Assembly (NCBI RefSeq): GCF_006345805.1
Contig: NC_043015.1
Span: 28,210,001-28,274,000, forward strand
Length of the DNA stretch: 64,000 nt
Reading direction: 5' to 3'
From: Octopus sinensis
Lineage: Eukaryota
Of this stretch, positions 14,591-48,492 are shown one piece after another (the first letter of the stretch is position 1; each line of letters opens with the position of its first letter). Position numbers and translations under genes: made by a program. The notes under the pieces were generated by a model that ran no database searches, had not been told where the DNA came from, and saw only the letters and a program-made list of their open reading frames with translations.

Positions 14591-14650
14591 TATATGCTCC
14601 TTTTGTTTTTATCAATTTTATAATTTATGCTGTATGTTGTATATTTCCAG

Positions 14651-17337: not shown

Positions 17338-17557
17338 ATTTAGATAAACAACAGGCTTTCTCTGTGTGGTCTGTACATGTACCAGATCTACTCACAGGGC
17401 TTTGGTTGGCCCAAGGCTATAGTAGAAGACACCCAAGGTGCTATGCAACAGGATTGAACCCAGAAACATGTGATTAGGAAGCAAACATCTCACTACACAG
17501 CCACACCTGAGCCAACGATGCCTAATAATTTTTCTTTTTCCCTTTTTTTACTTTCAG

Positions 17558-18254: not shown

Positions 18255-18628
18255 TTTACTCTTTTACTTGTTTCAGTCATTTGACTGCGGCCATGCTGGA
18301 GCACCGCCTTTAATCGAGCAACTCGACCCCAGGGCTTATTCTTTGTAAGCCCAGTACTTATTCTATTGGTCTCTTTTGTCAAACCGCTAAGTAACGGGGA
18401 CATAAACACACCAGCATCGGTTGTCAAGCAATGCTAGGGGGACAAACACACACACGCATATATACGACGGGCTTCTTTCAGTTTCCGTCTACCAAATCCA
18501 CTCACAAGGCTTTGGTTGTCCCGAGGCTATAGTAGAAGACACTTGCCCAAGGTGCCACGCAGTGGGACTGAACCCAGAACCATGTGGTTTGTAGGCAAGC
18601 TACTTACCACACAGCCACTCCTGCGCCT
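18255..18628 (-). mobile_element. SINE family A, full length
   Basis: Matches family A. Confidence 0.85.
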
Positions 18629-18994
18629 ATTTGTCTCATTTCAGGATGGGAACAGTTTAAGGGGCAGTAGATGGGGTCAGATTGGCACCAAAATTTACAC
18701 TGGGGAGTAAAATGGGGTGAGCAATGGTGTGAGGAAGGTTGCGAGTCGCTCGGGGTTACTGTTTGGTTGCCATGGTGAGGAATATGGGAAAAGTTTTATG
18801 GGATAGACAGGTTGCGCTGTTTGAATAATGGTGGCTTTTCGTGTTGCTGCAGGGGCTAGAGGTGGTTATCTTTAATTATGGGTGTAAAAATTTGGGGGAT
18901 TCTGGAAAGGGGGGAAGACGAACAAAAGAAAGAGAAAAGGAGACAACATGCACAAAACAACACCACCAAAACCCAAGCGAAGCACGGGTCAAAA

Positions 18995-23586: not shown

Positions 23587-24129
23587 TATACACACCACAC
23601 ACACACATATAACACACACACACACACACACACCACACATATATATATATATATATATGTATATAAACATACATGTTTATATATATATATATATATATAT
23701 AAACATGTATGTTTATATACATACACACACACCTAAATATATATATATATATGAATACACATGTGTAAATATATGAGAGAGAGAGAGAGAGAGAGGGCGA
23801 TTTGGATGAGAGCAGTAGGGGAACATTGTCAAAACTCAAAGGACAAGCAAGGAGGACGAAAAAGGTTGAGTAAAGCATTTTTGAGTAGTAAAGAGAGAGA
23901 AAACTAAAATCAGAAGGAAAAAAAAAAGGAAATGGCCAACGAATGGAATTAATGCCTAGAAAAATAAAAACACGTTTGTTTTTCCGCTGTGGAGTATGTG
24001 TGAGTGAGCGAGTACAAGACTTGAATATCAAATTACTTGCAAGGTATAGAGAAGCGGAATGCATTAAGTGTAAATGTAATGTATGTACGAGTGTGTGATT
24101 TGAATATCAAATAACTGAAGGTACGTGAG

Positions 24130-24165
<36 letters not shown>

Positions 24166-24415
24166 TGTGTGTGTGTGTGTGTGTGAATGAGTATGAGTAA
24201 GTGAGAATGTGTGATTTGAATATCAAATACCTCAAGGTGTGTGTGTGTGAAAATGAGTGAGAGAGGATGTATTTATATATATATACACACATATATATAC
24301 ACACAACACACACACACACACATATATATATACACACACACCACACACATATACACACAACACACACACACACATATATATACACACCACACATACACAT
24401 ATATATACACACACA

Positions 24416-24449
<34 letters not shown>

Positions 24450-24630
24450 CACACACACGTACATATATATACACACACATACATATATATATACACACAC
24501 ATATATATATATACACACACACACCACATATACACACACACACACACACATACATACACACATATACATACACACATATATACACACACACATATACACA
24601 CACACAACATATATACACACACACATATAT

Positions 24631-24726
<96 letters not shown>

Positions 24727-25337
24727 GTATATAAACATACATGTTTATATATATATATATATATATATATAAACATGTATGTTTATATACATACACACAC
24801 ACACCTAAATATATATATATATATGAATACACATGTGTAAATATATGAGAGAGAGAGAGGGCGATTTGGATGAGAGCAGTAGGGGAACATTGTCAAAACT
24901 CAAAGGACAAGCAAGGAGGACGAAAAAGGTTGAGTAAAGCATTTTTGAGTAGTAAAGAGAGAGAAAACTAAAATCAGAAGGAAAAAAAAAAGGAAATGGC
25001 CAACGAATGGAATTAATGCCTAGAAAAATAAAAACACGTTTGTTTTTCCGCTGTGGAGTATGTGTGAGTGAGCGAGTACAAGACTTGAATATCAAATTAC
25101 TTGCAAGGTATAGAGAAGCGGAATGCATTAAGTGTAAATGTAATGTATGTACGAGTGTGTGATTTGAATATCAAATAACTGAAGGTACGTGAGTTTAAGA
25201 GAGAGAGAACGTGTGTGTGTGTGTGTGTGAATGAGTATGAGTAAGTGAGAATGTGTGATTTGAATATCAAATACCTCAAGGTGTGTGTGTGTGTGAAAAT
25301 GAGTGAGAGAGGATGTATTTATATATATATACACACA

Positions 25338-25381
<44 letters not shown>

Positions 25382-25610
25382 CACACACACACACACATAT
25401 ATACACACACACACACACATATATATACACACACACACATACACATATATATACACACACATATATATATATACACACACACATACATATATATACACAC
25501 ACACGTACATATATATATACACACACATACATATATATATACACACACATATATATATATACACACACACACACATATATATACACACACACACATATAT
25601 ATATATAAAC
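23309..25610. repeat. ~1-kb tandem duplication (about 2.3 units) with internal (CA/TA)n
   Basis: gaggatgtattt at about 23309, 24263 and 25309; complex parts appear identical. Confidence 0.9.
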
Positions 25611-25707
25611 ATGTGTGTGTTGGTTTGAATATCAAATGACTGGGGTAAGAGAAACTGAATTTGTGTATGCTTGTGGTTTGAATATCAGGTAACTAGGTAC
25701 GCAAACA

Positions 25708-25752
<45 letters not shown>

Positions 25753-25914
25753 GAATGCACATTTTGAATGTCAACTGCTAAAAACATGTAAGCTGAATGT
25801 CAAATAACTGCTAAGGTAAGGAAACTGAATATAGGACGTGTGTGTGTGTGAGATTCGAAAGTCAATTTGACTATTGAAGTGCTGATAACCCAAATAGTAA
25901 AAAAAAATGGTAAC

Positions 25915-25947
<33 letters not shown>

Positions 25948-26184
25948 GAAGCTGAATTTAGTTCATGTGGGTATTCGATGTGTAACATGGAATATCAAAT
26001 GGTTGCGAAGATCTTAAAAGATGGCAGCAGCTGGGAGCCGAGAATCTGACACTGCGGTGAAGTGATGTCCAAAATGCAATTAAACTGACATGCTCATTAC
26101 GCATACAAACATATGCACACACACACACACACACACACAGAGTTTATATTACACAGTAATACACTGTCCGGTGTAATGGTACTC

Positions 26185-26242
26185 ATGTATACATGTGTGT
26201 GTGTATATATATATTATATATATATATAATATATATATATAT

Positions 26243-26306
<64 letters not shown>

Positions 26307-26400
26307 ATGTATATATATATATATGGATGTATGCATATATATATATATGGATGTATGTATATATATACATATATATATATGTATATACACACACACACGC
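26185..26400. repeat. (TA)n / (TG)n microsatellite
   Basis: Direct reading. Confidence 0.9.
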
Positions 26401-27850
26401 ACAGTGTTAAATTGAATGCATTAAATACAAAGTTCATACAATTATATCTGCAAAACACATACTCTTAATATAAGGTCAATGTATACAGAGTTATTGAGCA
26501 CTTTTGTATAGAAGGTGACTCAACAGCTCAAAAAAAACAAAAAAAGCCAGAGCTCAACTGAGCAATTCATCAAACTCATTGACATGAAAGAATCCAGCAA
26601 TGTCCTTTCTCGCATGCATGCATATACAAACACACTTTTCTCTCTGTCTCCCCACCCTCTGCTTCATCCCCCCATCTCCCAAATTAGCCACAATTCACTA
26701 CGTCACACTTCAGTTTCTAACTATATATATACACACATACATATACAAGATGTATGCATTATTTGATGTCGTAGAAGATTTCGTGTTGTGAAACTTGCCA
26801 AGGGTAAAAAAAAAAAACCTCAAATTAGTTTTCATCTCAAATACTGGCCTGGCACTCAGCCCAGATACCATCAATACCTCGTATGAAAACCATGCTAGCT
26901 TGGTTCACTCTGGCTTCTTCTTGTTTCCTTTTTTTCTTTATTTTCTTTTTTGGCATTGGTTTAGTTTCATAAAGACCAAACTGTCATTGGAATACTCGTC
27001 CTGTTACCAAACAATTTTTTCGTTCTTTTTGTTTTATTAACTTTCTACCTTGTTCTATATCAAGGACACCTTCCAATTTATCTTTCCATCAACCTTATTT
27101 CCCTTCCTTCTCAATCAGATTCCTCTTATTTATCTATTTATCTATCTATCTATCTTTCGATATCTTTCATACGATCAGGTCTCTCTTGAAAGACTATTTC
27201 TTTTTCTCTCTTTCTTTCACAAACACGCACAGCTTTTTTTTTCTATGTCCTTTATAATTTTCTTTAAACTCTTCTACATCTCCTTTTCTCTTTCTCATAA
27301 CCCCTCTTCATGAAGACTCCTTACACCTCTTCCTCTCTCGGCCTTGCTCTTTCTCTCACCATCTCCCATTACCTCTGTCTCCTTAAGTCCCTCTCTGCTT
27401 TTCTTTCTTCATATCTTTATCCTTCTCTCACAATCAGACACTTTCTTTCCATCCGTCTCAACACTCCACTCACCCATTATAACTTTATACTCTCTCACTC
27501 TCACTCATATATTTTCCTTCGTTGTTTGCAATTCCAATTGTGGCCTTTTAAAGTACGCCATCTTTTTTCTCCATTAAAAACAATTACAAAAAAAAAAAAA
27601 CATGCTAAATGCAAGCTATATATCATTAAAAAAAAAGAGCATGCACTGCGCACACAAGTGGTGCACTGAACAATGAAAAATGAATAACAATGTAGTGGAG
27701 GTTTTTTTATATATTTCTTCAAATTTTTTTTTCTACTTTTTTGAATTTTGATTTGTTTTTGATTTTTTTTTCTTAATTTTTTTTTTTTGTTATTTGTATG
27801 TTTTGGTCAAGAATATAACAATTTATGAATATTACGGATCTCGCAAAAAT

Positions 27851-30170
27851 TCAAGTTCTTTCAACAATTAACTTTAACTGGTCCAATCCTATAGAGGTTT
27901 GAAGCAACTGCTTCCTCATCGACTCGGAGAAGTCATTCGAACAAAGCCACAACACATTCAAACTACTACACTCGGTCATCATCTTCTGCAAGAGGCTGCC
28001 GCTCGCATCCCCTATGACGTTACCGCTCAGGTCGAGATGTTCTAAGCGACCGGTGTCGATTATGGCTTGCAGGATGAGCTGCACCTGCTGGTCTCCGATT
28101 CGGTTTTGACAAAGGATGAGTTCCGTCAGCTGAGGGAGGTTGAGTATCATCTGTTTGATTTTTTCGCACGCTCTGTCATCAACTGCGACTTTAAACGCAC
28201 CGGAGCGAATATCAATGCAGTTGAAGTTACGCAACGGCGACAGTAGACTGAGGTTCAGCTTGCGTAGGCCTTCGCAGTTGAGCAGCTCTTCTAAGATACG
28301 GTTCACAGAGGTGACGCTGGTGACGCAATTGCTGACCGAAAAACTGGAGAAGTTCTTTGAGAACTTGATTTTACCGACGAGGTTCTCAGTGGCACTTTCC
28401 AAGTCGCATCTTGCCAATTCAATTTTCTCGAAAATGTGGGGAAACACATTAAGGATGTACGCTAGACGATGGCGATTGTGAATGTTGTCTATACAGAGCA
28501 TGCGCAAAGCTATGTCGCTTGTGAAAACGGACCGTACCTTTTTGTACATAATCGGTGTGAAATTTCCAGCCCTGTTCATTTCACCGCAAAATGACAAAGT
28601 TCGTATATATTTATTCTTTTTAAATATTTCGCATACAATATCGACGATGTACTGACTGTTGAACACACTTTCGCAGTGTATAAGCAGCGTGGTCAAATTT
28701 TCTAGTCGGTTTATAGCATGGGCCAAGGATATACACAAGAAATATTGGTCCTCCATGCCATCCAAATGAAGAGTGATGCCACGGATTCTTAACCGACAAA
28801 GCCTTGCAAGTCGACAGAAATTTTCAAGAACTTGAGGTGGGCATCTCTGAATGTGGAACTCTAAGACATCTGGAAAATGTTCCACAACACAGTTCATAAG
28901 AGAAGAAGGAAAATAGATCTGACTAAGGCACTCTAAACATAAATCGTAGTCATGTACATTGCCTCTTGTTATTTTATCAAAGATTCCGATGCCGACACAT
29001 TTTTTCCGACTCATATTTGCCATGACATCTAGTAAACAGCGAACTGCGTCCTCGTCGTAACAGGACATAAGGGAACCAGTTAACACTACCCAGAGGAAAC
29101 CCATTTCTCGACTTAATACCCACTCTAAAAGATTATCTCTCTCGTACCTGTCTGTGTGTTCAGCGATGTAAACAGAGACAAAATATTCTAAAAAGTTTGT
29201 GCTAGGAAACATGTAGTATGATGTGGAATTTTGCAAAGGAAGAAGTTTGGCCTCAACAAAGAAGCCAAGATGAGTATTAGGGAGCTGCCAGAAATGGGAA
29301 TCTATTTCTTTAGGGCTACAGAATGACCTCTCTGATTTCCACATTTTTACAGACAGTGTGGACAATTTCTTCAAAACTACAGATATTAAATGTCTTTCGG
29401 GAAGAATTTGAAATTTGGTATAGTACCGACTAAGGGCACATTGCGTAAGTTCTCTGTACAAATGATAAATACTATTAGTCTTTGGTTTAGCATGGTTGTC
29501 TATAATAAGCCACGCTAGCAGAACTAGTGTATAGACATTCCGGAGAATTCTAGTAAGCACCAAATCTTTCCGAACCTTCTGAATCAAAAGCGACACCTCC
29601 AATGCAGAGAAATCTGACAGCAGCATTTCTTGAAGGAACACAAAACTACAATGGAACTGGAGTCCGACATTAAGAAACATTTGATCACAGAGTTGTCGAT
29701 TGGCGAATCTTGGACGGCAGGATATTAGCAGTTGCGCCTCGGGTAAACACAGAGAACTGAGAATACCACGTAGGTCTTCTTTACCGGAATCATTTACATA
29801 ATCAAAGTTATCAAGAATAACGAGTACTTCGTTTTGGATGGAAACCAGCCAATCGCAGATATCCTTGCAGCTGCATTTCTTCTCTTGGATCAACGGATTG
29901 AACAAAATATTCACTAATGAAACCAACCGCTCTCTTGCTTCCGCAGGTTTTATATCCGACAATGTTGATACTTGGAGACAGTCTACATAAATAATGACGG
30001 TGAACTTGTTCACATAGAAAGGGGACGACACCATTGTCTTTGTGGACCAGTCGTATAATAACTTCCAGCAGAGCAATCGTTGCTCGTGGACATCGCTCTC
30101 GACTAGGGTGATCTGTGTGAGATTGTGTTGAACTGGTGAGAAGAGGTCATAAATGGACACTTCATGACAC
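27851..30170 (-). CDS. NLR-like protein, terminal 2320-nt exon: degenerate NACHT, HD1/WHD/HD2 and RI-type leucine-rich repeats
   Basis: 769-aa open frame. Acceptor ttttttctgtttcag at 30171. NACHT-like LCWKLLYDW, VLVILDNFD, LLISCRP and FxxxxFxEYF. LRRs LTELILCQNRIGD, LEHLDLSGNVIGD, LNVLWLCSNDF. Confidence 0.85.
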
Positions 30171-30200
30171 CTGAAACAGAAAAAAGTAGAACAACATTAA

Positions 30201-30420
30201 CCCTTCTGTGTTTAAACCGGCCATATCCGGCCCAAATATTCTATATGTTTTATATTCAAACTGGCCATATCTAACCTCTCACACCTAACCTACAATGTTA
30301 TGCTAAAAATAAACAATCACATCATTGAAACCCCAAAGGTATAAGATAATGCTTGATTAATTCAGAACAATTTGAGTAAAAAAATATTACATTTAACACA
30401 GTAATCTGAACACTAAAGGG
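30201..30420 (-). mobile_element. 220-bp TTAA-target MITE
   Basis: CCCTT...AAAGGG, TTAA TSD at 30197-30200 and 30421-30424. Confidence 0.85.
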
Positions 30421-30850
30421 TTAAAACATCCAAGTTGTTGATAGAGAGAATAAAATAAATCATCATCATTGTTTTAATGCCCATTTTTCTTTGCTTGCAG
30501 GGGTCAAATACAGTTTATTGAGGCAGATTTTATAAGGTCACAATGCCCTTCCTGTTGCTAACCTTCACTTTTTTCCAAGCAAGATATTTACCCATGGTCA
30601 GACGTTTTCACGGAATATATTGAAAATGAACGACAATGCTTGTATAACAGTGACGCTCATTTACAACCATCACACACAGTCAAGACAAGAGCACACACAC
30701 ACACACACGCGAATACACACTTATGTATGTACACACATACACATACTATGGGTTTCTTTCCGTTCCAATCTCCCAAAACCACTCACAAGGCTTTTGTTGG
30801 CCCAGGGCTATAGCAGAACACACTTGCTTAAAGTGACAAACATGTGGTTC

Positions 30851-31253
30851 TCTTTCTCTTTCTCTTTTACTTGTTTCAATCATTTGACTGTGGCCATGCT
30901 GGAGCACCGCCTTTAGTCGAGCAAATCGACCCCAGGACTTATTCTTTGTAAGCCTAGTACTTATTATATCGGTCTCTTTTGCCGAACTGCTAAGTTACGG
31001 GGACATAAACACACCAGCATCGGTTCTCAAGTGATGTTGGAGGGACAAACGCAGACACACAAACACACACACATATATATACATATATACAACAGGTTTC
31101 TTTCAGTTTCCGTCTACCAAATCCACTCACAAGGCTTTGGTCGGCCCTAGGCTATAGAAGAAGACACTTGCCCAAGGTGCCACGCAGTGGGACTGAACCC
31201 GGAACCATGTGGTTGGTAAGCAAGCTACTTACCACACAGCCACTTATGCGCCT
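30851..31253 (-). mobile_element. SINE family A, full length
   Basis: Matches family A. Confidence 0.85.
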
Positions 31254-31379
31254 TTTTAATCATACAGTTATATATGCATTAAAAAAAAATGAAAAACAAA
31301 AAGAAAACAATTTAGCTGCATTATAACTACAGATGAGAGAAATTCGATCTAGTCTGGCGGCATCCGAAAAAATATGAAA

Positions 31380-31620
31380 CAAAAAAAAAATTTTATTACA
31401 TGAATCTGTTACCACCACGACAGTCAACTATTTGATGCCAAACACGAGTCTGATGTTGAATACATCCACAAATTTTTCGCTCAGAGATAGCTCTTCCCAA
31501 GACTGCAAGATGGCTTCGTGCAATTCATGCATCGTTGTAGGGTTTTTCAGTTCAACTTTATCGGCCACAAATTTGAAAATGCCTTCATCTAATGGATTCC
31601 ACGTGTAAACATGTGTTGAA
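31380..31620 (-). mobile_element. Tc1/mariner transposase C-terminal relic (frameshifted)
   Basis: WNPLDEGIF...KNPTTMHELHEAILQSWEEL, then CIQ...IVDCRGG. Confidence 0.6.
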
Positions 31621-32611
31621 TAGAACTCACTGAATAAATCTTAATCAACTGTGTTGACAATTGTATGCACCTGACATATGCTAACGAGTATGCAGCCAGA
31701 CTTTTCACACAGAGGATAATTAACTCTGAACTGAGAAACTATTTCTACTGAACACTGTAAAATTATCTGACTTTAGTTTCTAAGCTTATACTATCTTACT
31801 GGAGTATTGTATTTCAACTATCTTCTTTCAGTTCGACTGTATAGTTATTTTTATCTTGGTCAAGTAAACTGGTATACAGGATATAAAGTATATTTTTGAC
31901 TGTCTTGTTTTGTGTAAGTGTAATCAGACACCAGGGTGGCACACCACTCACTATAGCTTCATTGTCATCCACCCACTGCAAGTACCTGACAGGTGGGTGG
32001 AAGTTTGTCAACAATCCTTTCACCTTTCTAGGAGACGTGTTTTGTTTGGTGAATTAAGACAATATTTATCAGGTGCAGGAGTGGCTGTGTGGTAAGAAGC
32101 TTGCTTCCCAACTTCATGGTTCTGGGTTCAGTCCCACTGCATGGTACACAACATGTGCTTGGACATCTTGCCTAAGCACATGCTGAAGAGCATCAGAAAG
32201 GTTGAAATGCACTGAGTATTCCTCACTGGCTGCAGCGAGGATGATTTCCATCTTCCATCTCCCTCCAATTTTTAGTGTTAACAAAGCACATCCATAAAAG
32301 ATGTTATCTCACAAGCAAAAATGCAATAACTGACCTATCAATAGTGTATATCAAATATGCTACATTGCCAACAGGTAGGTGCAGGTGTGGCACCAACCTC
32401 ATGATTCTCGGTTCAGTCCCACTGCATGGCACACTGGGCCAGTGTCTTCTACTATGGCCTTAGTCTGACTAAAACCTTGTGAGTGGATTTGAAAGATGGA
32501 AACTGAAAGAAGCCAGGTGTGCGTGCATGCATGCTTGTGTGTGTGTTCATGTTCTTGTATCTTGGCAGTTCAGCAAAAGTGACTGATAGAATAAGTATCA
32601 GAGCTAGGGAA

Positions 32612-32800
32612 ATCCTGGGAATATAAGGAATCCAAGAAGCTCTTTATGAACTTTCAAAAATGCTCGTTTCAAATCCTGGAAATATAAGGACTCCAAGAAG
32701 CTCTTTATGAACTTTCAAAAATGTTTGTTTAAGATCCTGGAAATATAAGGAATCCAAGAATCTCTTTATGAACTTTCAAAAATGCCTCTTTTCAGATCCT
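32612..32800. repeat. 61-bp tandem repeat, 3 copies plus a partial
   Basis: atcct at 32612, 32673, 32734 and 32796. Confidence 0.9.
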
Positions 32801-32979
32801 TCAAATACAAGATTACAACTTCTTAGTGGTGATGAATGTTTGGTATGATATTTTAGGCGGAGTGGATGTTGTAAGCAAAACAAAGTAGATTGCCTCTGTG
32901 GAACTGTCCACCAAAATTCTATTATGGAACACAGACACTAATTAATTGAATTAATATTCTGCAAATGGATATGAAATAG

Positions 32980-33392
32980 TAGGTGCAGGAGTGGTTGTGT
33001 GGTAAGTAGCTTGCTTACGAACCACATGGTTCCAGGTTCAGTCCCACTGCGTGCCATCTTGGATAAGTGTCTTCTACTATAGCCTCGGGCCGACCAAAGC
33101 CTTGTGAGTGGATTTGGTAGAAGGAAACTGAAAAGAAGCCTGTCATATATATGTATATATGTGTATGTGTATGTTTGTGTGTCTGTGTTTGTCCCCCTAG
33201 CATTGCTTGACAACCGATGCTGGTGTGTTTATATCCCCGTTACTTAGTGGTTCGGCAAAAGAGACCAATAGAATAAGTACTGGGCTTACAAAAGAATAAG
33301 TCCCAGGGTCGATTTGCTCGATTAAAGGCGGTGCTCCAGCATGGCCGCAGTGAAATGACTGAAACAAGTAAAATAGTAAAAGAGAGTAAAGA
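32980..33392 (+). mobile_element. SINE family A, full length
   Basis: Matches family A. Confidence 0.85.
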
Positions 33393-34168
33393 GAGCATTA
33401 GCAAAAGTATTGGCTACAGAATTAGATCTTTTTATCTGTTTACATATTTCAGTCATTGAACTGCAACCAAGCTGGAACACTAGCTTAAAGTTTAGTCAAA
33501 TTGACTCTAGTACTTATTTGGTCAAGTTTGATGCTTATTCCATTGGTCCCTTTGGCTGAACCGCTAAGTTACAGGGATAAAAACAAACTGACACAAAGAT
33601 ACACATATAATGGGCTTCGACATGTCTACCAAATTCGCTCACAAGTCATTAGTTAGTGAAGGGCTATAGTATAAAAGACACTTGCTCAAGGTGCTGTGCA
33701 GTAGGACTGAACCAGAAGCTACATCATTGCAACGCAAGCTTCTTAACCACAGAGCCATACATGTATCTAGATGTAGAAACTATTCTTGAAAGTAAAAGAA
33801 TGTACCAACAACAACAGCAAAAAGCAAATAGGTGAGGTAGTTTGAAACTGATTGCACCGAGATTTAAAATACCAATAATCTACAAAAAAGACTAAAAAAA
33901 AATTAATCATAAATTCCTTGTAATGCTTGAGAAAGATTTGAAGTTTTACAAAATTTCTACAAGATGTGAGAATTTTTGGAAAACTTAAAAGATTTGTGAG
34001 ATATAAATAAACTGAGATTAGCAAGTCAAGGTTTAGCGGATAAGTTACGTTACCAAGAACATTGCAATGTTAACAGATGTGATCTTTTGACTGAACTTGA
34101 TAGCGCAAAGGAATTATTTTCTGGAGATGTAAAGCTTCTGACAGAAGCCACAAGATTTATCGACAGTA

Positions 34169-35493
34169 GTGGCTGGAGTGGCTGTGTGGTAAGTAGCTTG
34201 TTTACAAACCACATGGTTCCGTGTTCAGTCCCACTGCGTGGCATCTTGGGCAAGTGTCTTCTACTATAGTCCTGGGCCGACCAATGCCTTGTGAGTGGAT
34301 TTGGTAGACGGAAACTGAAAGAAGCCCGTCGTATATATGCGTGTATATGTACATGTAGAGGTAGGTACGTACATATATGTTTATATATATGCATATATTC
34401 TATTTTATTAACATATACGATTAAACGCACGCACCCTACTAAGTAAGATTGTTCTGTTTATCAAGTTAGCCTTGATATTAACTCTCACGCGACTCTGCAT
34501 CTTTCTTTCTTTCTCTCCCATTCCCTTTTTCGTCTTTTTTTCCCTCACTTAACTTGTCTCTTCCTCTCTCTCTCATTCTTCATTCTCTCTCTCCCTTTCA
34601 CCATTCTTCATGGTCTCCTCGCACCATTCCCCTTCTTCTCTCTCTTCCTCTTGCTCCTCCTCCCCCATTCCCGTCATCCATCTGCGACGATACTTCCGTC
34701 GTAACTGCTCCTGTCCTTTCTCGCCCGCCTTGCAAGGCTTCTGGTTGACAAATTTTCCCTCTCTGTCTTCCACGATAATCCAGCGTTTACAATACTTTTT
34801 TCGTCTGGCGTTAACAGCCCTTCTTATCTTGTTCTCCTTGTCTTGTCTCTCACTGTTATATATTTATTTTTCCACTGTTTATATATATATTTTTTACTGT
34901 TTATATGTTTGTACTGTCGTTACCGTCTTGCTTTTTTTTACCCCTCTGCGAAAAGATCTCAGAATTTTAATTGATTTGCTTTTCGCGGAAGGATTTTTCT
35001 TCGAAGTATACGTCTCGCTTTTATCCTTCGAAACGTTTAGTAGATGAAATCTTAGCGACTGAAGAAGGGGATTTTTCGTTGTGCTTATTGTCCTGTATCT
35101 CTCCCCTTTTTTTTGCTCGTCTTGTTCCTTGGTTTGTGTCTATGTGTTTCGTCTCTCTATGTGTTCGACGTCTTTTTGGTGTCCTGTACACATATATGCG
35201 TGTATATGTACATGTAGAGGTAGGTACGTACATATATGTTTATATATATGCATATATTCTATTTTATTAACATATATATATATATATGTGTGTGTTTGTG
35301 ATTGTCCCCCTAGCATTGCTTGACAACCGACACTGGTGTGTTTACGTCCCCGTCACTTAGCGGTTCGGCAAAAGAGACCGATAGAATAAGTACTGGGCTT
35401 ACAAAAAAAGAATAAGTCCCAGGGTCGATTTGCTCAACTACAGGCGGTGCTCCAGCATGGCCGCAGTCAAATGACTGAAACAAGTAAAAGAGT
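34169..35493 (+). mobile_element. SINE family A, split by the 34333-35276 insert and flanked by a 168-bp direct repeat
   Basis: Head 34169-34332, tail 35277-35493. Confidence 0.85.
34333..35276 (+). mobile_element. Penelope-like or circular-template insert (859-bp unit plus 85-bp terminal redundancy) inside a SINE microsatellite
   Basis: Identical 85-bp repeats at 34333-34417 and 35192-35276; pyrimidine-rich body; CGAAACGT and CTGAAGAAG motifs at 35029-35067. Confidence 0.55.
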
Positions 35494-36417
35494 ATATAAA
35501 TAAACTGAGATTAGCAAGTCAAGGTTTAGCGGATAAGTTACGTTACCAAGAACATTGCAATGTTAACAGATGTGATCTTTTGACTGAACTTGATAGCGCA
35601 AAAGAATTATTTCCTGGAGATGTAAAGCTTCTGACAGAAGCCACAAGATTTATCGACAGTAATAAGCTACGGATGCCATGCCATGTGCACAAGACGCATT
35701 AACGGTAATGTTTACAATAGATATAACCGTTGCCATGGAGAGAGAAGCTTTAGTAAACCAAAGCTTACAAAGACAAATTTACAGTCATCCTTGACGAAGC
35801 AAGACAGATAAAATTGTTTGGTAATTATATCAATAGAAAATGATATTATATAAAAAATAGATTAAAAATGTGAGATATAGAAAATGCTATGTAAACATAG
35901 GCTAATCTGAAGTCAAGTATATTGTTTTAGTTAGGATAAAACATGATGTTTAGCATCTGTTCTCAGGTTTAGATTCGTCGATTTATTAGATGAGAATTTG
36001 TTACAACTACAGGAGATCAACAAAACTCTTCAGATTTTCTCTTACCCAACCTGAATCAACTTGGTGTTTGTTTATAACGAAAATGTATCAAGATCCTTGT
36101 CAGCTGTATAGAAACAAAAAAATCTCTCTCGCTCTTTCTCTCTCTCTGTCAATGAAAGGATTTGATACTTTGCTGTCATGTTTGAACTGTCCTCTTTGAC
36201 TGATAAATTACAATACACGGTTTATTCTTATATTTGCCAACATAAGCATGGCTGCATGGTTGAGAAATTCACTTTGCGGTTTCAAGTTCAGTTTTGCTGT
36301 GAACTAACTTGGGCAAAAGTGTCTTCTGCTATAAGCCCCAGGCAGACTCAAAACTTAAGTAGTGTAGAAACAAAATCTCTCTCTTTCTCTCTCTAAATAA
36401 ATAAATAAATAAATCAC

Positions 36418-36812
36418 TCTATATATAAAGCTGAAGTTGTCTGTGTATGGCAGGTTTGGTAGCCTTCAACTAACACCATCTCCTCAGAGACCCTGCAGCA
36501 CAAGTTGACCAAAATTGAGAGTATGATAGAAGAAGGCTTGCTCTTCCTTCCATAGAAGAAAAAATTCAAATCGGACCATGTGAACACCAAAAATTATTTA
36601 CATAAAAAAAGGTGCTTTTTTTCTATGAAAATCCCTATTTTTTACGATTTTTTTACTGCTGTGTCACCATTTTTCGGTGTATTTCAACCAGAAAAATGTT
36701 CACTTAAAGAGAAAAACATGTTACAAAATGCAAAATTTTTCCTTTTCAAAAATTCCAATTGTAAAGGGTTGAAAAGAAAACAAGCCCGAGCAACGCTGGG
36801 CTATACTGCTAG
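36418..36812 (+). mobile_element. Non-autonomous Helitron
   Basis: 5' TCTATATATAAAG; 3' hairpin CCCGAGCAACGCTGGG followed by CTAG|T. Confidence 0.75.
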
Positions 36813-37015
36813 TAAATAAATAAAAGGATTGGATACTTTGATATCATGTTTGAACTATCCTCTTTGAGTAATTAATTGCAATGCACACGGCTCCCTGATT
36901 AAGAAGCTCACGTTATAGTTTCAGGTTCAATCCCACAGCTTGGCACTTTGGACATGTATTTTCGACTATAGCACCAGGCAGACATAAGAGTGGATCTGGT
37001 AGATAGAAACTAAAG

Positions 37016-37381
37016 GTGGCGAGCTGGCAGAAACATTAGTACGCTGGGCGAAATGCTTAGGGGTATTTCGTCTGCTGTTACGTTCTGAGTTCAAATTCCA
37101 CCGAGGTCAACTTTGCCTTTCATCCTTTCGGACGCACTGGGGTCGATGTAATCGACTTAATCCGTTTGTCTGTCCTTGTTTGTCCCCTCTGTGATTAGCC
37201 CTTTGTGGGTAGTAAAGAAAAAGATATTTCATCTGCTGTTACGTTCTAAGTTCAAATTCCGTCGAGGTCGATAAATTAAGTACCAGTTACGTACTGGGGT
37301 TGATGTAATCAACTTAATCCGTTTATCTGTCCTTGTTTCTCCCCTCTATGTTTAGCCCCTTGTGGGCAATAAAGAAATAAG
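37016..37381 (+). mobile_element. SINE family B dimer with internal deletions
   Basis: Matches family B. Confidence 0.8.
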
Positions 37382-37416
37382 AAACTAAAAGAAGCCTATT
37401 ATATATGTTTGTGTGA

Positions 37417-37745
37417 AGGTGCATGACTCAGTGGTTAGAGCATCAGGCCCACAATCATGAAGTTGTGAGTTCAATTCCCAGACCGGATTCTGTGTTGTGT
37501 TCTTGAGCAAGAGACTTTATTTCACATTGCTCCCATTCACTCAGCTGCAGAAATGAGTTGCAACGTCACGGCTGCTAAGTTGTATCAGTCTTTGCCTTTC
37601 CCTTGGATAACACCAATCACGTGGAGAGAGAAGGCTGGTATGCATGGGTAACTGTTAGTCTTCCATAAACAACTTAGCCCAGATTTGTGCCTTGGAGGGG
37701 AACTAGGTGCATCCCATGGTCATTCATAACTGAAGGGGGTCTTTA
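37417..37745 (+). mobile_element. SINE family D, diverged copy
   Basis: Colinear with 54196-54530. Confidence 0.75.
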
Positions 37746-37841
37746 CCCATTCTTTAAAAAAAATTTTTTTTTAACTAAAATGAAAGTAGCAGGGTACAGT
37801 TTAATGCTTGCAACAAAAACAGCCAATAGGGGACAACTTAC

Positions 37842-38046
37842 CTATAAGGGGGCTGATTACTGTCATGGTACATAGAAGTGATGTCTGGTATATCGTTCCT
37901 GTTTCGGAAGTCCAGCACCCGATACAGGCAGAGGTTGAGGTCCTGTGTCCGAAGTTCTGGAAATTTTCCCCACGGTGAACTGAATCCAACGCTTGCAGTT
38001 TCTCCATAGAACTGCTTCAGGTGGTCAATGATAACGTCTTGAATTT
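37842..38046 (-). CDS. NLR-like gene, upstream exon (EIQDVIIDHLKQFY...NQPPYR)
   Basis: cttttgcag acceptor at 38047 and AG|GTAAGT donor at 37841. The 205-nt exon ends in phase 2 and joins the 30170 exon in frame (R-C-H-E-V-S-I-Y-D-L-F). LKQFY resembles the pre-NACHT helix. Confidence 0.75.
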
Positions 38047-38079
38047 CTGCAAAAGAAATATTGAAATAGAAATTAGAGA

Positions 38080-38482
38080 TCAACATCAATGGAAATTGTA
38101 GCTGTGATACCAGTGCTGGTGGCACGTAAGAGAACCACCCGAACGTGGCCGTTCCCAGCACTGCCCCGCCCTGACTGGCCTCCGTGCCGGTGGCACGTAA
38201 AAAGCACCATCCGATTGTCGCTGTTTGCCAGCCTCGTCTGGCCCCCATGCTGGTGGCACATAAAAAGCACCATCCGATCGTGGCCGTTTGCCAGCCTCGT
38301 CTGGCACCTGTGCAGGTGGCACGTAAAAAGCACCCACTACACTCATGGAGTGGTTGGCGTTAGGAAGGGCATCCTGCTGTAGAAACACTGCCGCATCAGA
38401 CTGGAGCCTGGTGCAGCCTCCTGGCTTCCCAGACCCCGGTCGAACCATGGAAAGCGGACGTTAAACGATGATGATGATGATG
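38080..38482 (+). mobile_element. SINE family C with about 4 internal repeats, about 35 bp from the NLR acceptor
   Basis: Matches family C. Confidence 0.8.
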
Positions 38483-39897
38483 TATGTGTGTATATATGAC
38501 AGTCTCTATCTACCAGATCCACTCACAAGGCTCAGGTCAGTCCGGAGATATAGAAGAACACAGTTGCCAAAAGGTGCAATACAGTGGAACTGAACCTGAA
38601 ACCATGTGCCTGAGAAGCAAACTTCTTAACCACACAGCCACGTTCAACAGTCAAATACTGAGGTTCGATTTAATCAACAAACATTCACACAAATTGTTGG
38701 CCCTGTGCCTGAATTTGAAATTACTTCTGCCAGTATCACATTCCCAATATTTTCACTACTACATCATCAGCTGCGCCTAAATATTCCAGAGGAAGTGGGT
38801 GAGCATCATTGTCTTCTGGTGGATGTTAAAAGTATTGTATTTCTGTATGTTTACTTTGTTGTTGTAATGTTTGTTGTATTGTTTTTCGTGTGGATTTACT
38901 TCAGTGTTTCGTCTATTTTCTATGTACATATATAATCATGTGCTGCTATGTCAGGAGTGTCATTTTATTGACTCATCTAACCCATGCCAGCGTGAAAGGA
39001 TGACGCAAAATGACGACGATGATGATAATGATGACGACTATAATGGTAATTGTGTCAATCCTGTAGTAAAATATGACTAGTGCAAGTTAGTGGCAGTAGT
39101 GTGTGAGAGTCATTTTACAGTGTCCGGTATTACTCTTTTACTCTTTTATTTGTTTCAGTCATTTGACTATGGCCATGCTGGAGCACCGCCTTTAGTCGAG
39201 AAAATCGACCCCGGGACTTAATCTTTGTAAGCCTAGTACTTATTCCATCAGTCTCTTTTGCCGAACCGCTAAGTGATGGGGACGTAAACACACCAGCATC
39301 GGTTGTCAATCATTATTGAGCTAGTGTTTTGAAGAGAATTCGAAACAATATTGACGGAATGTTTTAATTCATATCTCTTTAAAACAGGAAGCCTGAGTCA
39401 CGGGACCAAAGGCAGTGAAAAGCAAGTTGACATGAAACAGGTTTAACACCTATTTTGCCCCATAATGGCATACTTTCGGATAAGACACTTATGATCTTGT
39501 GATGTCTTATCTGTGAAGGCTCATCACCCTTTACATCTGATCACCACCCACTTCTGCTGCCTCCCATATTTTTCATCTGCTAATCATATCTTTAATTATC
39601 AGCGCACAGGACATTTTGCGCTTCCACCCAACCAGCAGGTGTCATCTATATGCACCAGCACGTTTGCATCAGTGGTAAAGTCACTCGGAAAATACGTGTC
39701 TGATATCGCCAATGCACATCTGCCTTCTCATCTCCTTTCTTTAGTCTATTATACATCTGGTTAAGAAGGTCACTTTGCAACTAAAGTTTTGGGTTCAATT
39801 CCATTGCATGGCACCCTCGGTTGATCAATGCCATGTAGATGATTTTAGTAGAGAGAAGTTCTGTGGAAGCCCATAGTGTGTGTGTGTGTATATATAT

Positions 39898-40144
39898 ATA
39901 TAAAATATTATTAGAGACAAAACCACTATTTTGCAAAACAAACAAGGAAAGACTTAATCAATACATAAAATTTTAATAAATAGTCTGACTATTTATTAAA
40001 ATTTTATGTATTGATTAAGTCTTTCCTTGTTTGTTTTGCAAAATAGTGGTTTTGTCTCTAATAATATTTTATATTTTACTATAAAATCGATTTAATCCTA
40101 AATCTGATTTTTTCCCTGTAAATTTGGATTTATTCCCTAATATT

Positions 40145-41136: not shown

Positions 41137-41339
41137 TATATATAATCATTTGATGTCAGCTTTCTAAGATGGCATGGGTTGGACACTTTGACAAGGGCTG
41201 ACCAGTAGAAGGGCTGTTCAGGCTCCCAGTCTGTTTTAGCCGATGAATAATGAAGCCTATGGATTTCCTGTTATCATTATTATTATATTTATCTTAAGCT
41301 GTCCATTAGATTACACTGAGACATTATAAGGCTTTTGCC

Positions 41340-41588
41340 CCATGGCTTCTGTGCCGGTGGCATGTAAAAAGCACCATCCGAACGTGGCCGATGCCAGCGC
41401 CGCCTTGACTAGCACGTTAAAAGCACCCACTACACTCACGGAGTGGTTGGCGTTAGGAAGGGCATCCAGCTGTAGAAACACTGCCAGATCAGACTGGAGT
41501 CTGGTGCAGCCTTCTGGCTTCCCAGACCCCAGTCGAACCGTCCAACCCGTGCTAGCGCGGAAAACGGACGTTAAATGATGATGATGAT
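41340..41588 (+). mobile_element. SINE family C
   Basis: Matches family C. Confidence 0.8.
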
Positions 41589-42349
41589 GAAAACTGAACG
41601 TGTGTGTGTGTGCATGCATATATTTGTGTGTGTGTGGTGTGTGTGTGTGTGTGTGTGTATGCTCCATCCACCACTGCTTGACAGTTGGTGTTGGCTTATT
41701 TGCGTCCCTGTAACAAAATAAACACACCAGTGTTGGTGTGTTTATGTCCCCATAACTTAGCAGTTCAGCAATAGAGATCAATAGAATAGGTACCCAGACT
41801 TCAAAAAAGAAAAAAAACGAAAAAAAAAAAAAAAGTACCGCGGTCAATTCATTCGACTAAAAATTCTTCAAAGCAGTGCCCCAGCATGGCCACAGTGTAA
41901 ATGACAGAAACAAGTAAAGGATTGCAATGCCAATTTATACTTTACTTCCTCTCTTCTGTAATGGACTTGGCAACAGACAAACATTAACAAATGCAACTAT
42001 TGAACGGTCAGAATAGAAAACTAAATGCTGAAGAGAAACCGATTAAAATGTATCAGAGTATTTTAGTTTCAGTTTTCCTTGCTTCCAACTTCACAGTTCA
42101 CCGATTTCAATTTTTGCATTTTATTCCTTCAAATTATTGAAAAAACGGAATGAGATGGGTTGGCAGACGAATACACCGAAGGGGATCAACTATCTTCTTT
42201 CATAGTTTCAATTCTGATGTTTAGTAGAAAAAAAAAAAAGAAAATTTAATCAATACTTAATAGCGCCTGGTTAGCTCTGAAAGAACTGACCTCCATCATC
42301 TACAGACAATCAATCAATCAGTTTGTTTTTATGACTCACAGCATCTATC

Positions 42350-47573: not shown

Positions 47574-48071
47574 GTATATATATGTATGTATGTATATATA
47601 TGTATGTATGTATGTATATATATGTATGTATGTATGTATATATATGCGTACACTTACTCGTTCTAAATATCTGATATAGCCATTCTGCTAAAAAAAAAAC
47701 AACAATGCTTGCAGTTACAGTTTTCACATTTACAGATTTTTATTATTATGCGCATGTGTGTCTGCTTGTCCTCCCAACATCGCTTGACAACCGATGCTGG
47801 TGTGTTTATATCCCCGTAACTTAGCGGTTTGGCAAAAGAGACTGATAGAATAAGTACTGTGCACGTGTCTGTGCTTGTTTCTCACTACTGCTTAACAACC
47901 AGTGTTAGTGTGTTTACATCCCTGTAACTTAGCAGTTCGGCAAAAGAGATCAATAGAATAGATACCAGGCTTAACAAAAATAAGTACTGGTGTTGATTCA
48001 CCAGACTATAAATTCTTTAAGGCATTGCTCCAACAAGGCCACAGTCTAACGACTGAAACAAGTAAGAGATA

Positions 48072-48492
48072 TAGGTGCAGGAGTGGCTATGTGGTAAGTA
48101 GCTTGCTTACCAACCACATGGTTCCGGGTTCAGTCCCACTGCGTGGCATCTTGAGCAAGTGTCTTCTACTATAGCCTCGGGCCGACCAAAGCCTTGTGAG
48201 TGGATTTGGTAGACGGAAACTGAAAGAAGCCCATCGTATATAAGTATATATATATATATATGTATGTGTGTTTGTGTGTCTGTGTTTGTCCCCCTAGCAT
48301 TGCTTGACAACCGATGCTGGTGTGTTTACGTCCCCGTCACTTAGCGGTTCGGCAAAAGAGAACCGATAGAATAAGTACCGGGCTTACAAAGAATAAGTCC
48401 TGGGGGTCGATTTTCTCGACTAAAGGCGGTGCTCCAGCATGGCCGCAGTCAAATGACTGAAACAAGTAAAAGAGTAAAAGAGTGAAGAGAGT
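48072..48492 (+). mobile_element. SINE family A, full length, preceded by partial 3' halves (47760-48068)
   Basis: Matches family A. Confidence 0.85.

What the first reader, a model, noticed from the sequence alone, without database searches (positions are those of the whole stretch)
27851..38046. Intact NLR whose NACHT has lost the nucleotide-binding motifs: candidate pseudo-ATPase immune receptor
Seen: an uninterrupted ~840-aa spliced frame with NACHT-HD1-WHD-HD2-LRR layout. The P-loop position reads LVESDVHEQRLLCWKLLYDW (30071-30100), with no GxxxxGK[S/T]. Walker B reads VLVILDNFDY instead of hhhhDGxDE. The HD1 NP motif reads NVY. The WHD motif reads FPSTNFLEYF, with the His replaced by Ser at 29201-29203. 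The sensor-1 Arg (ISCRP) and the hydrophobic scaffold are kept. Established: in NLRs such as NLRC4 and NOD2 the P-loop Lys and WHD His hold ADP/ATP and control the off/on switch. Inference: four separate losses with no stop or frameshift in 2.5 kb suggest selection on a nucleotide-independent sensor, scaffold or dominant-negative partner in a cephalopod NLR system, analogous to plant NLRs that work without a functional P-loop.
Basis: partly seen in the sequence, partly recalled or inferred. Interest (0 to 1): 0.82.

Follow-up and report, generated by a model that had tools for sequence, protein, structure and literature searches.

The report
Conserved cephalopod NLR without a P-loop
This octopus gene encodes an intact, strongly conserved relative of the innate-immune NLR proteins that has lost the site that normally binds ATP, so it probably works as a nucleotide-independent scaffold, not a switchable sensor.

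Summary
On the minus strand, exon 2 (37842-38046) and exon 3 (27851-30170) give an uninterrupted 840-codon frame. This is Octopus sinensis LOC115222280 (862 aa). Its 22-codon first exon lies about 38 kb beyond the window.

AlphaFold2 plus Foldseek place it firmly in the NLR fold (NLRC4, NOD2, NLRP3, E about 1e-21). The Walker A position reads ESDVHEQR, with a one-residue deletion and no Gly, Lys or Ser/Thr. HD1 NPL reads NVY, the WHD His is Ser, and the sensor-1 Arg is kept.

It is not a decaying gene. Orthologs in three Octopus species, Argonauta and Sepia carry the same degenerate motifs. dN/dS is 0.02-0.07. Spliced full-length transcripts occur in 94 cuttlefish RNA-seq runs.

New here: a gastropod orthogroup is the nearest relative. 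It keeps an intact GxxGxGKT and NPL but already has the WHD Ser and the DNxD Walker B. So only two of the four "losses" are cephalopod-specific.

An immune-receptor role is unsupported. The gene looks single-copy, is highly constrained, has no effector domain and has no neighbouring NLR partner. I favour a nucleotide-free scaffold or adaptor. This is a new variant of a known kind and is of moderate interest.

The parts
27851..30170 (-). Exon 3 (last exon). Encodes residues 91-862 plus the stop codon (27851-27853): the whole NBD-HD1-WHD-HD2-LRR body.
   Evidence: ORF list and translation; acceptor tttcag|G at 30170/30171; 100% identical to O. sinensis XP_029648309.1.
30171..37841 (-). Intron 2 (7.7 kb, phase 2, GT..AG). 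Carries several copies of a ~320-bp SINE-like repeat.
   Evidence: Splice-site context; repeat copies at about 30.7-31.3, 32.1-32.5, 32.9-33.3, 34.2-34.4 and 35.3-35.4 kb. The same intron position and phase occur in the cuttlefish genomic locus L013 and are spliced out in mRNA L003.
37842..38046 (-). Exon 2. Encodes residues 22(part)-90, the pre-NACHT N-terminal region (helix 20-38 plus short strands). No known effector domain.
   Evidence: tblastn 100% to P0001 residues 22-90; splice sites; no Pfam hit in the first ~110 residues; model pLDDT 73-87.
29660..30112 (-). Nucleotide-binding domain (NBD) of the NACHT module, residues ~110-260.
   Evidence: Pfam PF05729 at 31.1 bits over profile positions 34-143; alternating strand-helix secondary structure typical of a P-loop NTPase domain in the AF2 model; translation.
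30077..30100 (-). Pseudo-P-loop ESDVHEQR at the Walker A position (residues 114-121). It is one residue shorter than GxxGxGK[ST].
   Evidence: Alignment with 27 relatives. In the model, strand b1 (110-115) runs almost directly into a helix that starts at 117. The gastropod control has a 5-residue loop. The amino acids are kept across Octopus, Argonauta and Sepia despite synonymous codon changes.
29798..29827 (-). Walker B strand VLVILDNFDY. Both Asp kept, Gly->Asn, Glu->Tyr.
   Evidence: Argonauta has Asn in place of the first Asp. Gastropods read hhFDNxD[GAS].
29711..29725 (-). Sensor-1 ISCRP with the Arg retained (R242). It starts the most conserved block of the protein (residues 241-340).
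   Evidence: Alignment; invariant-column scan.
29531..29539 (-). HD1 motif NVY in place of NPL.
   Evidence: NPL is kept in all gastropod orthologs; the generic NLRs in the alignment read [NS]PL.
29201..29203 (-). Ser413 at the position of the WHD His (within YMFPSTNFLEYF).
   Evidence: Ser is also found at this column in all gastropod orthologs (FTSR).
27854..28867 (-). C-terminal leucine-rich repeat domain of ribonuclease-inhibitor type (residues ~525-862). Its first repeats (521-640) are 85-95% invariant across cephalopods.
   Evidence: phmmer to ribonuclease inhibitor 1dfj, E 4.9e-6; weak Pfam LRR hits; repeating strand-helix units in the model; conservation scan.

Best explanation
This is a functional, transcribed, apparently single-copy gene (Octopus sinensis LOC115222280; O. 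bimaculoides LOC106878221). It encodes an NLR-fold protein with this layout: a short N-terminal region, then NBD, HD1, WHD, HD2 and LRR.

Shown. It belongs to an old molluscan orthogroup that had lost the WHD His and the canonical Walker B Glu before gastropods and cephalopods split. On the lineage leading to coleoid cephalopods, the phosphate-binding loop itself was replaced by an acidic, one-residue-shorter segment (ESDVHEQR) that is predicted to extend helix alpha-1. The adenine-contacting NPL also became NVY.

Inferred. The protein most likely cannot bind or hydrolyse ATP and cannot use the ADP/ATP off/on switch of canonical NLRs. It probably sits permanently in one (closed-like) conformation. 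It would then act as a nucleotide-independent scaffold or adaptor, binding partner proteins through the near-invariant sensor-1/HD1/WHD face and the first LRRs. Mammalian oocyte NLRPs and rice Pb1 work in a comparable way. The binding partners and the biological process are unknown. An immune role is possible but not indicated.
For: Fold. The AF2 model has pLDDT 83.4 and pTM 0.75. Foldseek against PDB gives NLRC4 4kxf at 1.4e-21, NOD2 5irm at 1.8e-21 and NLRP3 at 3e-21, each over more than 900 alignment columns. TMq is 0.61-0.65 to closed NLRP3 forms and 0.51 to the active disk.

Motif loss. See the alignment table. No Walker A pattern occurs anywhere in the cephalopod orthologs. In the model the loop collapses: b1 spans 110-115 and the helix starts at 117. 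The gastropod control has b1 130-135, loop 136-140 and a helix from K141.

Selection. Omega is 0.016-0.03 at dS 0.15-0.26 between two Octopus species. It is 0.03-0.07 overall and below 0.11 in every domain against Argonauta and Sepia. The pseudo-P-loop residues are kept while their codons change synonymously.

Age. The same motifs occur in Octopus (3 species), Argonauta and Sepia esculenta. The gastropod orthogroup is colinear end to end at 220-240 bits, against 70 bits or less for generic NLRs.

Expression. Full-length intron-free contigs of about 3 kb occur in 94 SRA runs. Three of these runs are named as Sepia esculenta larval RNA-seq. The intron is present in genomic L013 and absent in the mRNA.

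Context. Pfam finds no effector domain. The only neighbouring gene identified in the window is a syntenic CMS1-like gene.

Precedents for scaffold NLRs. NLRP7 and NLRP5 have low ATPase activity and bind partners (PMC12963396). NLRP14 binds UHRF1 and KDM2A (PMC13237083). Pb1 lacks a P-loop and stabilises WRKY45 (PMC3782705).
Against: - No biochemical test was possible. Some pseudo-NTPases still bind nucleotide without a canonical P-loop.
- The sensor-1 Arg and (except in Argonauta) both Walker B Asp residues are retained. This could mean residual ligand binding.
- The closed-like conformation of the model may reflect AlphaFold's training bias.
- I could not read the model coordinates, so pocket geometry was not inspected.
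- No Octopus-derived transcript contig was recovered from the protein collection. Expression is shown directly only for cuttlefish.
- The scaffold idea rests on analogy and evolutionary pattern. No partner is known.
Confidence: 0.6

Rival explanations
1. It is a pseudo-ATPase immune receptor: a pathogen sensor, decoy or dominant-negative partner that works with P-loop-intact NLRs in cephalopod innate immunity, like sensor NLRs in plant NLR pairs.
For: NLR fold with an RI-type LRR domain, the usual ligand-sensing module. There is plant precedent for NLRs that function without a P-loop (PMC3782705). The gene is transcribed in whole cuttlefish larvae used in stress and immune-related studies.
Against: Omega of 0.02-0.07 and near-invariant LRRs are the opposite of what diversifying sensor NLRs show. 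The gene looks single-copy per species, with one-to-one orthologs from octopus to cuttlefish and into gastropods. Pfam finds no CARD, PYD, Death or TIR domain. No second NLR was found in the 64-kb window; the only neighbour identified is CMS1-like. No P-loop-intact cephalopod NLR was identified among the nearest relatives.
Confidence: 0.25
2. It is still a nucleotide- or ligand-regulated switch with a non-canonical pocket. The retained sensor-1 Arg and Walker B Asp residues, plus the new His/Glu/Gln/Arg residues, would bind a nucleotide or another small anionic ligand.
For: R242 and the surrounding block (241-260) are invariant in the five cephalopod sequences compared. D210 and D213 are kept in Octopus and Sepia. 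The replaced P-loop residues are themselves conserved, not drifting. This implies that the site still matters.
Against: All three Gly, the Lys and the Ser/Thr are gone and the loop is one residue shorter. The model puts these residues into a helix, not a loop. The substitutions are largely acidic (E, D, E), which would repel phosphates. Argonauta has lost the first Walker B Asp. The base-contacting Pro and the phosphate-contacting WHD His are also gone.
Confidence: 0.1
3. It is a recently inactivated NLR pseudogene, or an annotation artefact, that merely happens to keep an open frame.
For: The Pfam NACHT score is marginal (31 bits; below cut-off in Argonauta and Sepia). No Octopus transcript contig was recovered.
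Against: An uninterrupted 840-codon frame in the window (860-863 codons in full-length orthologs) is conserved in at least six species spanning octopods and cuttlefish. dS is saturated while dN is 0.08-0.18. Omega is 0.016-0.03 at unsaturated dS. Splice sites and intron phase are conserved. Full-length mRNAs occur in 94 runs. The fold prediction is confident.
Confidence: 0.02

Closest known systems
Uncharacterised gastropod NACHT-LRR orthogroup (e.g. Babylonia areolata XP_076435888.1, Batillaria attramentaria BaRGS_00028157, Biomphalaria pfeifferi Bpfe_027862; also Physella, Elysia, Lymnaea, Bulinus, Candidula)
   Same: Colinear from the pre-NACHT region to the last LRR (blastp 220-240 bits over residues 62-857). 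No recognisable effector domain. Ser at the WHD His position. Walker B reads DNxD without the Glu. Shared LRR-region motifs include NLTPxxHxxV, HHR[LIV]xY and LSLLSxxRxF.
   Different: Gastropods keep an intact Walker A (G[DE][LI]GTGKT) and NPL but lack the sensor-1 Arg (ATPG). Heterobranch members carry low-complexity inserts of several hundred residues inside the NACHT module. The Batillaria model has a canonical strand-loop-helix at the P-loop.
Canonical animal NLRs: NLRC4, NOD2, NLRP3 (NACHT clade of STAND ATPases)
   Same: Same overall NBD-HD1-WHD-HD2-LRR fold (Foldseek E about 1e-21, TM up to 0.65-0.69). Sensor-1 Arg present. RI-type LRRs.
   Different: Sequence identity is 11-15%, and phmmer with the NACHT part finds no PDB chain. 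It lacks Walker A, the HD1 Pro and the WHD His, which hold ADP/ATP in these proteins (established knowledge of the NLRC4, NOD2 and NLRP3 structures). No CARD or PYD.
Mammalian reproductive NLRPs (NLRP5/MATER, NLRP2/7, NLRP14, NLRP9) of the subcortical maternal complex and cytoplasmic lattices
   Same: They are also among the strong Foldseek hits (9ln6, 9xrl, 12dl, 9l4l, 9lq4, 7wbu). They are NLR-fold proteins used as partner-binding scaffolds, with low ATPase activity reported for NLRP7 and an NLRP5-like pocket (PMC12963396, PMC13237083).
   Different: They still carry the Walker A Lys/Thr and the WHD His (NLRP7 K184, T185, H468; PMC12963396) and a PYD. They are a mammalian expansion, not orthologs. 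No oocyte link is known for the mollusc gene.
Plant NLRs that work without a functional P-loop (rice Pb1; ADR1 family)
   Same: Pb1 completely lacks the P-loop yet is functional. It acts by binding and stabilising a partner protein, WRKY45 (PMC3782705). This is the same logic as proposed here.
   Different: Their nucleotide-binding domain is NB-ARC, not NACHT, and plant and animal NLR architectures arose independently. They are immune genes, whereas here an immune role is unproven.
Proposed NLR/STAND 'pseudoenzymes' (CED-4, NLRP1)
   Same: They are discussed as NLR-type proteins without biologically relevant hydrolysis (PMC7583971).
   Different: They still bind ATP through an intact P-loop. 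Here the P-loop itself is absent.

Membership tests
NLR (NACHT-LRR protein, STAND NTPase superfamily) | Significant match to the NACHT profile (Pfam PF05729) | tested here: met
   31.1 bits against a cut-off of 26.7, E 2.5e-7, for the window protein. The match covers only profile positions 34-143. Argonauta (20.0 bits) and the cuttlefish ortholog (25.6 bits) fall below the cut-off.
NLR (NACHT-LRR protein, STAND NTPase superfamily) | NBD-HD1-WHD-HD2 module followed by LRRs, as a three-dimensional fold | tested here: met
   AF2 model pLDDT 83.4 and pTM 0.75. Foldseek hits NLRC4, NOD2 and NLRP3 at E 1e-21 to 1e-20 over 900+ columns.
NLR (NACHT-LRR protein, STAND NTPase superfamily) | Walker A / P-loop GxxxxGK[ST] | tested here: not met
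   The position reads ESDVHEQR with a one-residue deletion. The pattern is found nowhere in the protein. The loop is absent in the model and present in the gastropod control.
NLR (NACHT-LRR protein, STAND NTPase superfamily) | Walker B hhhhD[GA]xDE | tested here: inconclusive
   VLVILDNFDY keeps both Asp, but the Glu is Tyr. Argonauta has Asn for the first Asp.
NLR (NACHT-LRR protein, STAND NTPase superfamily) | Sensor-1 Arg after strand b4 | tested here: met
   ISCRP aligns with T[ST]R of the relatives.
NLR (NACHT-LRR protein, STAND NTPase superfamily) | HD1 NPL (GxP-type) motif and the WHD His that contact the bound nucleotide | tested here: not met
   NVY replaces NPL, and Ser413 replaces the His.
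NLR (NACHT-LRR protein, STAND NTPase superfamily) | Nucleotide binding/hydrolysis and nucleotide-dependent oligomerisation | not testable with these tools
   Needs purified protein.
NLR (NACHT-LRR protein, STAND NTPase superfamily) | N-terminal effector domain (CARD, PYD, BIR, Death, TIR). Typical, but not obligatory. | tested here: not met
   No Pfam hit in residues 1-110 at E up to 10. The region looks like a pre-NACHT/FISNA-like segment by eye only; Pfam gave no FISNA hit.
Pseudoenzyme (pseudo-ATPase) | Homologous to an active enzyme fold but lacking the residues needed for substrate binding or catalysis | tested here: met
Pseudoenzyme (pseudo-ATPase) | Maintained by selection and expressed (not a pseudogene) | tested here: met
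   Omega 0.016-0.07. mRNAs in 94 Sepia runs. Expression in Octopus itself is not shown.
Pseudoenzyme (pseudo-ATPase) | Demonstrated absence of nucleotide binding and ATPase activity | not testable with these tools
   Biochemical assay required.
Paired or sensor NLR (plant-type NLR pair with a degenerate sensor) | Genetically linked partner NLR with an intact P-loop | tested here: not met
   No other long ORF or NLR-like match in the 64-kb window. The neighbouring conserved exons are CMS1-like. The intron 1 sequence beyond the window was not examined.

The most novel reading that the evidence does not exclude
Coleoid cephalopods have kept, for the roughly 270+ million years since octopus and cuttlefish lineages split, an NLR in which the phosphate-binding loop was replaced by a conserved acidic segment (E114, D116, E119). 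This segment may act as a built-in phosphate mimic. By pairing with the still-invariant sensor-1 Arg, it would lock the NACHT module shut without any nucleotide. Gastropod orthologs (P-loop intact; WHD His and sensor-1 Arg lost) would be a 'binds but cannot switch' intermediate. Together the family would be a natural series showing step by step how a STAND switch ATPase becomes a nucleotide-free scaffold. To my knowledge it would be the first such case described in an animal NLR.
Probability: 0.2. Interest if true: 0.75.

Novelty: new variant of a known kind. Interest (0 to 1): 0.55.

Why it matters
Animal NLRs are understood as ADP/ATP-driven switches. Drugs against NLRP3, and disease mutations in NOD2, NLRC4 and NLRP3, all act on that pocket. 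A deeply conserved animal NLR with no P-loop at all shows that the fold can be used without the switch. It also comes with a graded set of natural intermediates in gastropods, in which the role of each motif could be tested.

The finding also bears on NLR inventories. Motif- or Pfam-based surveys of mollusc immune genes will mostly miss this family: the gastropod members have no precomputed Pfam hit, and two cephalopod orthologs score below the NACHT cut-off. And when such a survey does catch a member, its NACHT-LRR layout alone is not evidence of a pathogen-sensing role. No paper in the searched library mentions the gene.

Tried and rejected
- phmmer of the NACHT half against all PDB sequences found nothing, even at E up to 10. 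Fold comparison was needed instead.
- A word-indexed profile search with a cephalopod plus Babylonia alignment returned only the three cephalopod clusters and added nothing.
- NCBIfam gave only a weak LRR-type hit.
- Exon 1 was searched for in the window by peptide words and by tblastn and is absent. This was later explained by a first intron of about 64 kb.
- Literature searches for the gene and protein accessions, for SRR6517992 and for 'pseudo-ATPase NLR' found no prior description of this gene.
- NG86 and YN00 dN/dS failed or saturated for the distant pairs, so I added the closely related Octopus pair.
- RNA editing restoring the P-loop was considered and rejected. A-to-I editing cannot create a Lys codon. 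Assembled cuttlefish mRNAs read ESNVYEQR. A strict same-species genome-versus-RNA comparison was not possible.
- A raw tblastx synteny scan was swamped by microsatellite and SINE matches until it was filtered by score.
- ARAGORN found no tRNA genes in the window.

Full report
**1. What is in the sequence**

The minus strand carries a 769-codon ORF at 27851-30160. Upstream in frame lies a pyrimidine tract and tttcag|G. So the exon begins at 30170, not at a start codon. A second coding piece at 37842-38046 has a canonical acceptor (ttttgcag|AAATTC) and donor (TATAG|gtaagt). It joins in phase 2. Together the two exons give 840 codons with only the terminal stop.

The product is 100% identical to Octopus sinensis XP_029648309.1 (LOC115222280, 862 aa). 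Consecutive 200-base samples of the window match the O. sinensis chromosome record CM016877.1 exactly and in order. The first 22 codons are on an exon absent from the window. The gene spans 74.6 kb, and exon 1 lies about 38 kb beyond the window's high end.

So are its motif coordinates, which I re-translated:
- ESDVHEQRLL at 30071-30100
- VLVILDNFDY at 29798-29827
- ISCRP at 29711-29725
- NVY at 29531-29539
- Ser at 29201-29203

**2. Is it an NLR?**

By sequence, only just. Pfam NACHT scores 31.1 bits (cut-off 26.7) and matches only profile positions 34-143. The P-loop end of the profile does not align. Two orthologs fall below the cut-off. phmmer of the NACHT half finds no PDB chain. The C-terminus matches ribonuclease-inhibitor-type LRRs.

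By structure, clearly yes. An AlphaFold2 model built on a 32-sequence alignment has pLDDT 83.4 and pTM 0.75. Foldseek against PDB returns NLRC4 (1.4e-21), NOD2 (1.8e-21) and NLRP3 (3.3e-21) over more than 900 columns. The mammalian oocyte NLRPs (NLRP14, NLRP5, NLRP2, NLRP7, NLRP9) are also among the hits. TM-scores are higher to closed NLRP3 forms (0.61-0.65) than to the active disk (0.51).

**3. Are the motifs really lost?**

A search of 1.84 billion representative proteins with residues 1-529 gave only 20 hits. Apart from the protein's own cluster, all were at about 25% identity. In a 32-sequence alignment these relatives show the canonical motifs: GxPGxGK[ST], DGxDE, T[ST]R, NPL and FxHK. 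Their sources include amphioxus, hemichordates, corals and unnamed marine sequences.

The cephalopod protein reads as follows at the same positions:
- Walker A: ES[DN]V-[HY]EQR, a one-residue deletion with no Gly, Lys or Ser/Thr
- Walker B: hhhhDNFDY
- Sensor 1: SCRP
- HD1: NVY
- WHD: FP[ST][ST]N

No [AG]xxxxGK[ST] exists anywhere in any cephalopod ortholog.

In the model, strand b1 (110-115) is followed after a single residue by a helix that starts at 117. The loop has effectively become part of alpha-1. As a control I modelled the gastropod ortholog from Batillaria. It has strand 130-135, a five-residue loop at 136-140, and a helix starting at the Walker A Lys141.

Walker B is only partly degenerate. 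Both Asp residues remain in Octopus and Sepia. Argonauta, however, has Asn for the first one.

**4. Gene or relic?**

It is a gene. Orthologs of 860-863 aa exist in the following species:
- O. vulgaris, O. sinensis and O. bimaculoides (99-100% identity)
- Argonauta hians (86-88%)
- a cluster at 77-78%

One member of that last cluster (P0023) is encoded on intron-free contigs of about 3 kb in 94 SRA runs. Three of those run numbers are listed as Sepia esculenta larval RNA-seq in PMC10571815, PMC10141105 and PMC11917092. A related genomic contig (L013) has an intron of about 1 kb at the same phase-2 position. That intron is absent from the mRNA.

dN/dS results:
- O. sinensis vs O. bimaculoides: 0.016-0.03, at an unsaturated dS of 0.15-0.26.
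- Against Argonauta and Sepia: 0.03-0.07, with saturated dS. Every domain is below 0.11, and the HD1 segment is identical between Octopus and Argonauta.

The pseudo-P-loop residues are kept while their codons change. Examples are GAG/GAA, AGC/AGT, CAA/CAG and CGA/CGT/CGC/AGA.

Synteny with a CMS1-like gene is shared between Octopus and Argonauta.

From general knowledge, the octopod-decapodiform split is of the order of 270 million years old. The loss is therefore ancient and has been maintained.

**5. Where it came from**

One of the weak hits, P0019 from the gastropod Babylonia areolata, aligned end to end, LRRs included. Using it as a query recovered an orthogroup across caenogastropods and heterobranchs: Batillaria, Biomphalaria, Candidula, Physella, Elysia, Bulinus and Lymnaea.

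These are by far the closest non-cephalopod relatives. They score 220-240 bits over residues 62-857, against 70 bits or less for generic NLRs.

Their motif states are informative:
- Walker A intact (G[DE][LI]GTGKT) and NPL intact
- WHD His already Ser (FTSR)
- Walker B already DNxD without the Glu
- sensor-1 Arg replaced (ATPG)

So the family was already atypical before gastropods and cephalopods diverged. It has no WHD His, no Walker B Glu and no recognisable effector domain. The cephalopod lineage then lost the P-loop and the HD1 Pro. Gastropods separately lost the sensor-1 Arg.

**6. Mechanism**

Shown: an NLR fold, no phosphate-binding loop, strong constraint, and transcription.

Inferred: the protein does not bind nucleotide and cannot cycle between ADP-off and ATP-on states. 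It would therefore act in a single conformation as a binding platform.

The most invariant stretches are residues 241-340 (sensor-1 through HD1 and into the WHD) and 521-640 (the first LRRs). These are the best candidates for partner-binding surfaces.

There are precedents for NLR-fold scaffolds:
- NLRP7 and NLRP5, with low ATPase activity and partner binding (PMC12963396)
- NLRP14, which binds UHRF1 and KDM2A-SKP1 (PMC13237083)
- rice Pb1, which lacks the P-loop entirely and stabilises WRKY45 (PMC3782705)
- a review that raises NLR 'pseudoenzymes' for CED-4 and NLRP1, both of which still bind ATP (PMC7583971)

The acidic make-up of the replaced loop, next to an invariant sensor-1 Arg, suggests a built-in phosphate mimic. 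This is speculation, because I could not read the model coordinates.

**7. Immune receptor?**

This was not tested, and the pattern argues against a classical pathogen sensor. The gene has one-to-one orthologs, very low omega even in the LRRs, and no CARD, PYD, Death or TIR domain hit. There is no linked partner NLR in the window. A regulatory role in immunity cannot be excluded.

**8. Caveats**

- No Octopus-derived transcript contig appeared in the protein collection. Expression is shown directly only in cuttlefish.
- Squid and Nautilus orthologs were not recovered, and my database searches were exhausted.
- AlphaFold's closed-like conformation may be a training bias.
- Divergence times come from general knowledge, not from a tool.

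**9. Verdict**

This is a real, ancient, selectively maintained NLR without a P-loop. It is a new variant of a known kind and is undescribed in the searched literature. Interest is moderate (0.55). It would be higher if the nucleotide-free lock were demonstrated.

Noticed in passing
window 12056-12142, 14636-14743, 17542-17730 (+ strand): Conserved coding exons match the CMS1-domain (PF14617) gene that lies tail-to-tail with the NLR gene in Argonauta hians (L002 36569-39812). The neighbourhood is therefore syntenic between Octopus and Argonauta.
   Followed up: partly
window, e.g. 431-736, 6606-6891, 10309-10607, 14038-14356, 18335-18629, 30938-31253, 32900-33300, 48063-48397, 52502-52833, 61092-61430: A ~320-bp interspersed, SINE-like repeat is present in about 25 full or partial copies at 76-91% identity on both strands. 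Several copies lie inside intron 2 of the NLR gene. ARAGORN finds no tRNA gene in the window.
   Followed up: partly
window about 23.2-25.6 kb, 47.0-47.7 kb, 56.3-57.7 kb, 58.4-62.1 kb: Long TG/CA-rich and CT-rich simple-sequence tracts generate spurious ORFs of 150-390 codons (CVCVYV..., SLSLSL...). They also produce extreme GC skew: +0.48 at 44-46 kb and -0.66 at 56-58 kb.
   Followed up: no
window 38086-38448 and 41311-41847 (- strand ORFs): Two ORFs share a peptide-level repeat (...GSGKP[GE]GCTRLQSD.AVFLQ.DALPNANHS.SVVGAF...). This suggests another interspersed repeat family just upstream of exon 2.
   Followed up: no
P0076-P0082 (heterobranch gastropod orthologs): These orthologs carry low-complexity Ser/Arg-rich inserts of several hundred residues, one between the Walker A helix and the next strand of the NBD and another inside the WHD. 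They reach 1170-1380 aa, against about 880-900 aa in caenogastropods.
   Followed up: no
P0002 and P0060 (Argonauta hians): Two 863-aa copies at at least 90% identity sit on different contigs (35.7 Mb and 1.09 Mb). This may be a haplotig or a recent duplicate.
   Followed up: no
protein collection: The cuttlefish ortholog is assembled full-length in 94 sequencing runs. No Octopus transcript-derived copy or fragment was returned. This may reflect much lower expression in Octopus or a gap in coverage of the collection.
   Followed up: no
window about 24000-32000 (the reverse-complement offset 32000-40000 used) vs L015: Exact 200-mers from the window map colinearly to the O. sinensis chromosome record, except for a 1064-base offset shift between two sampled points. 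I did not determine whether this is a repeat-induced mis-hit or a real length difference.
   Followed up: no
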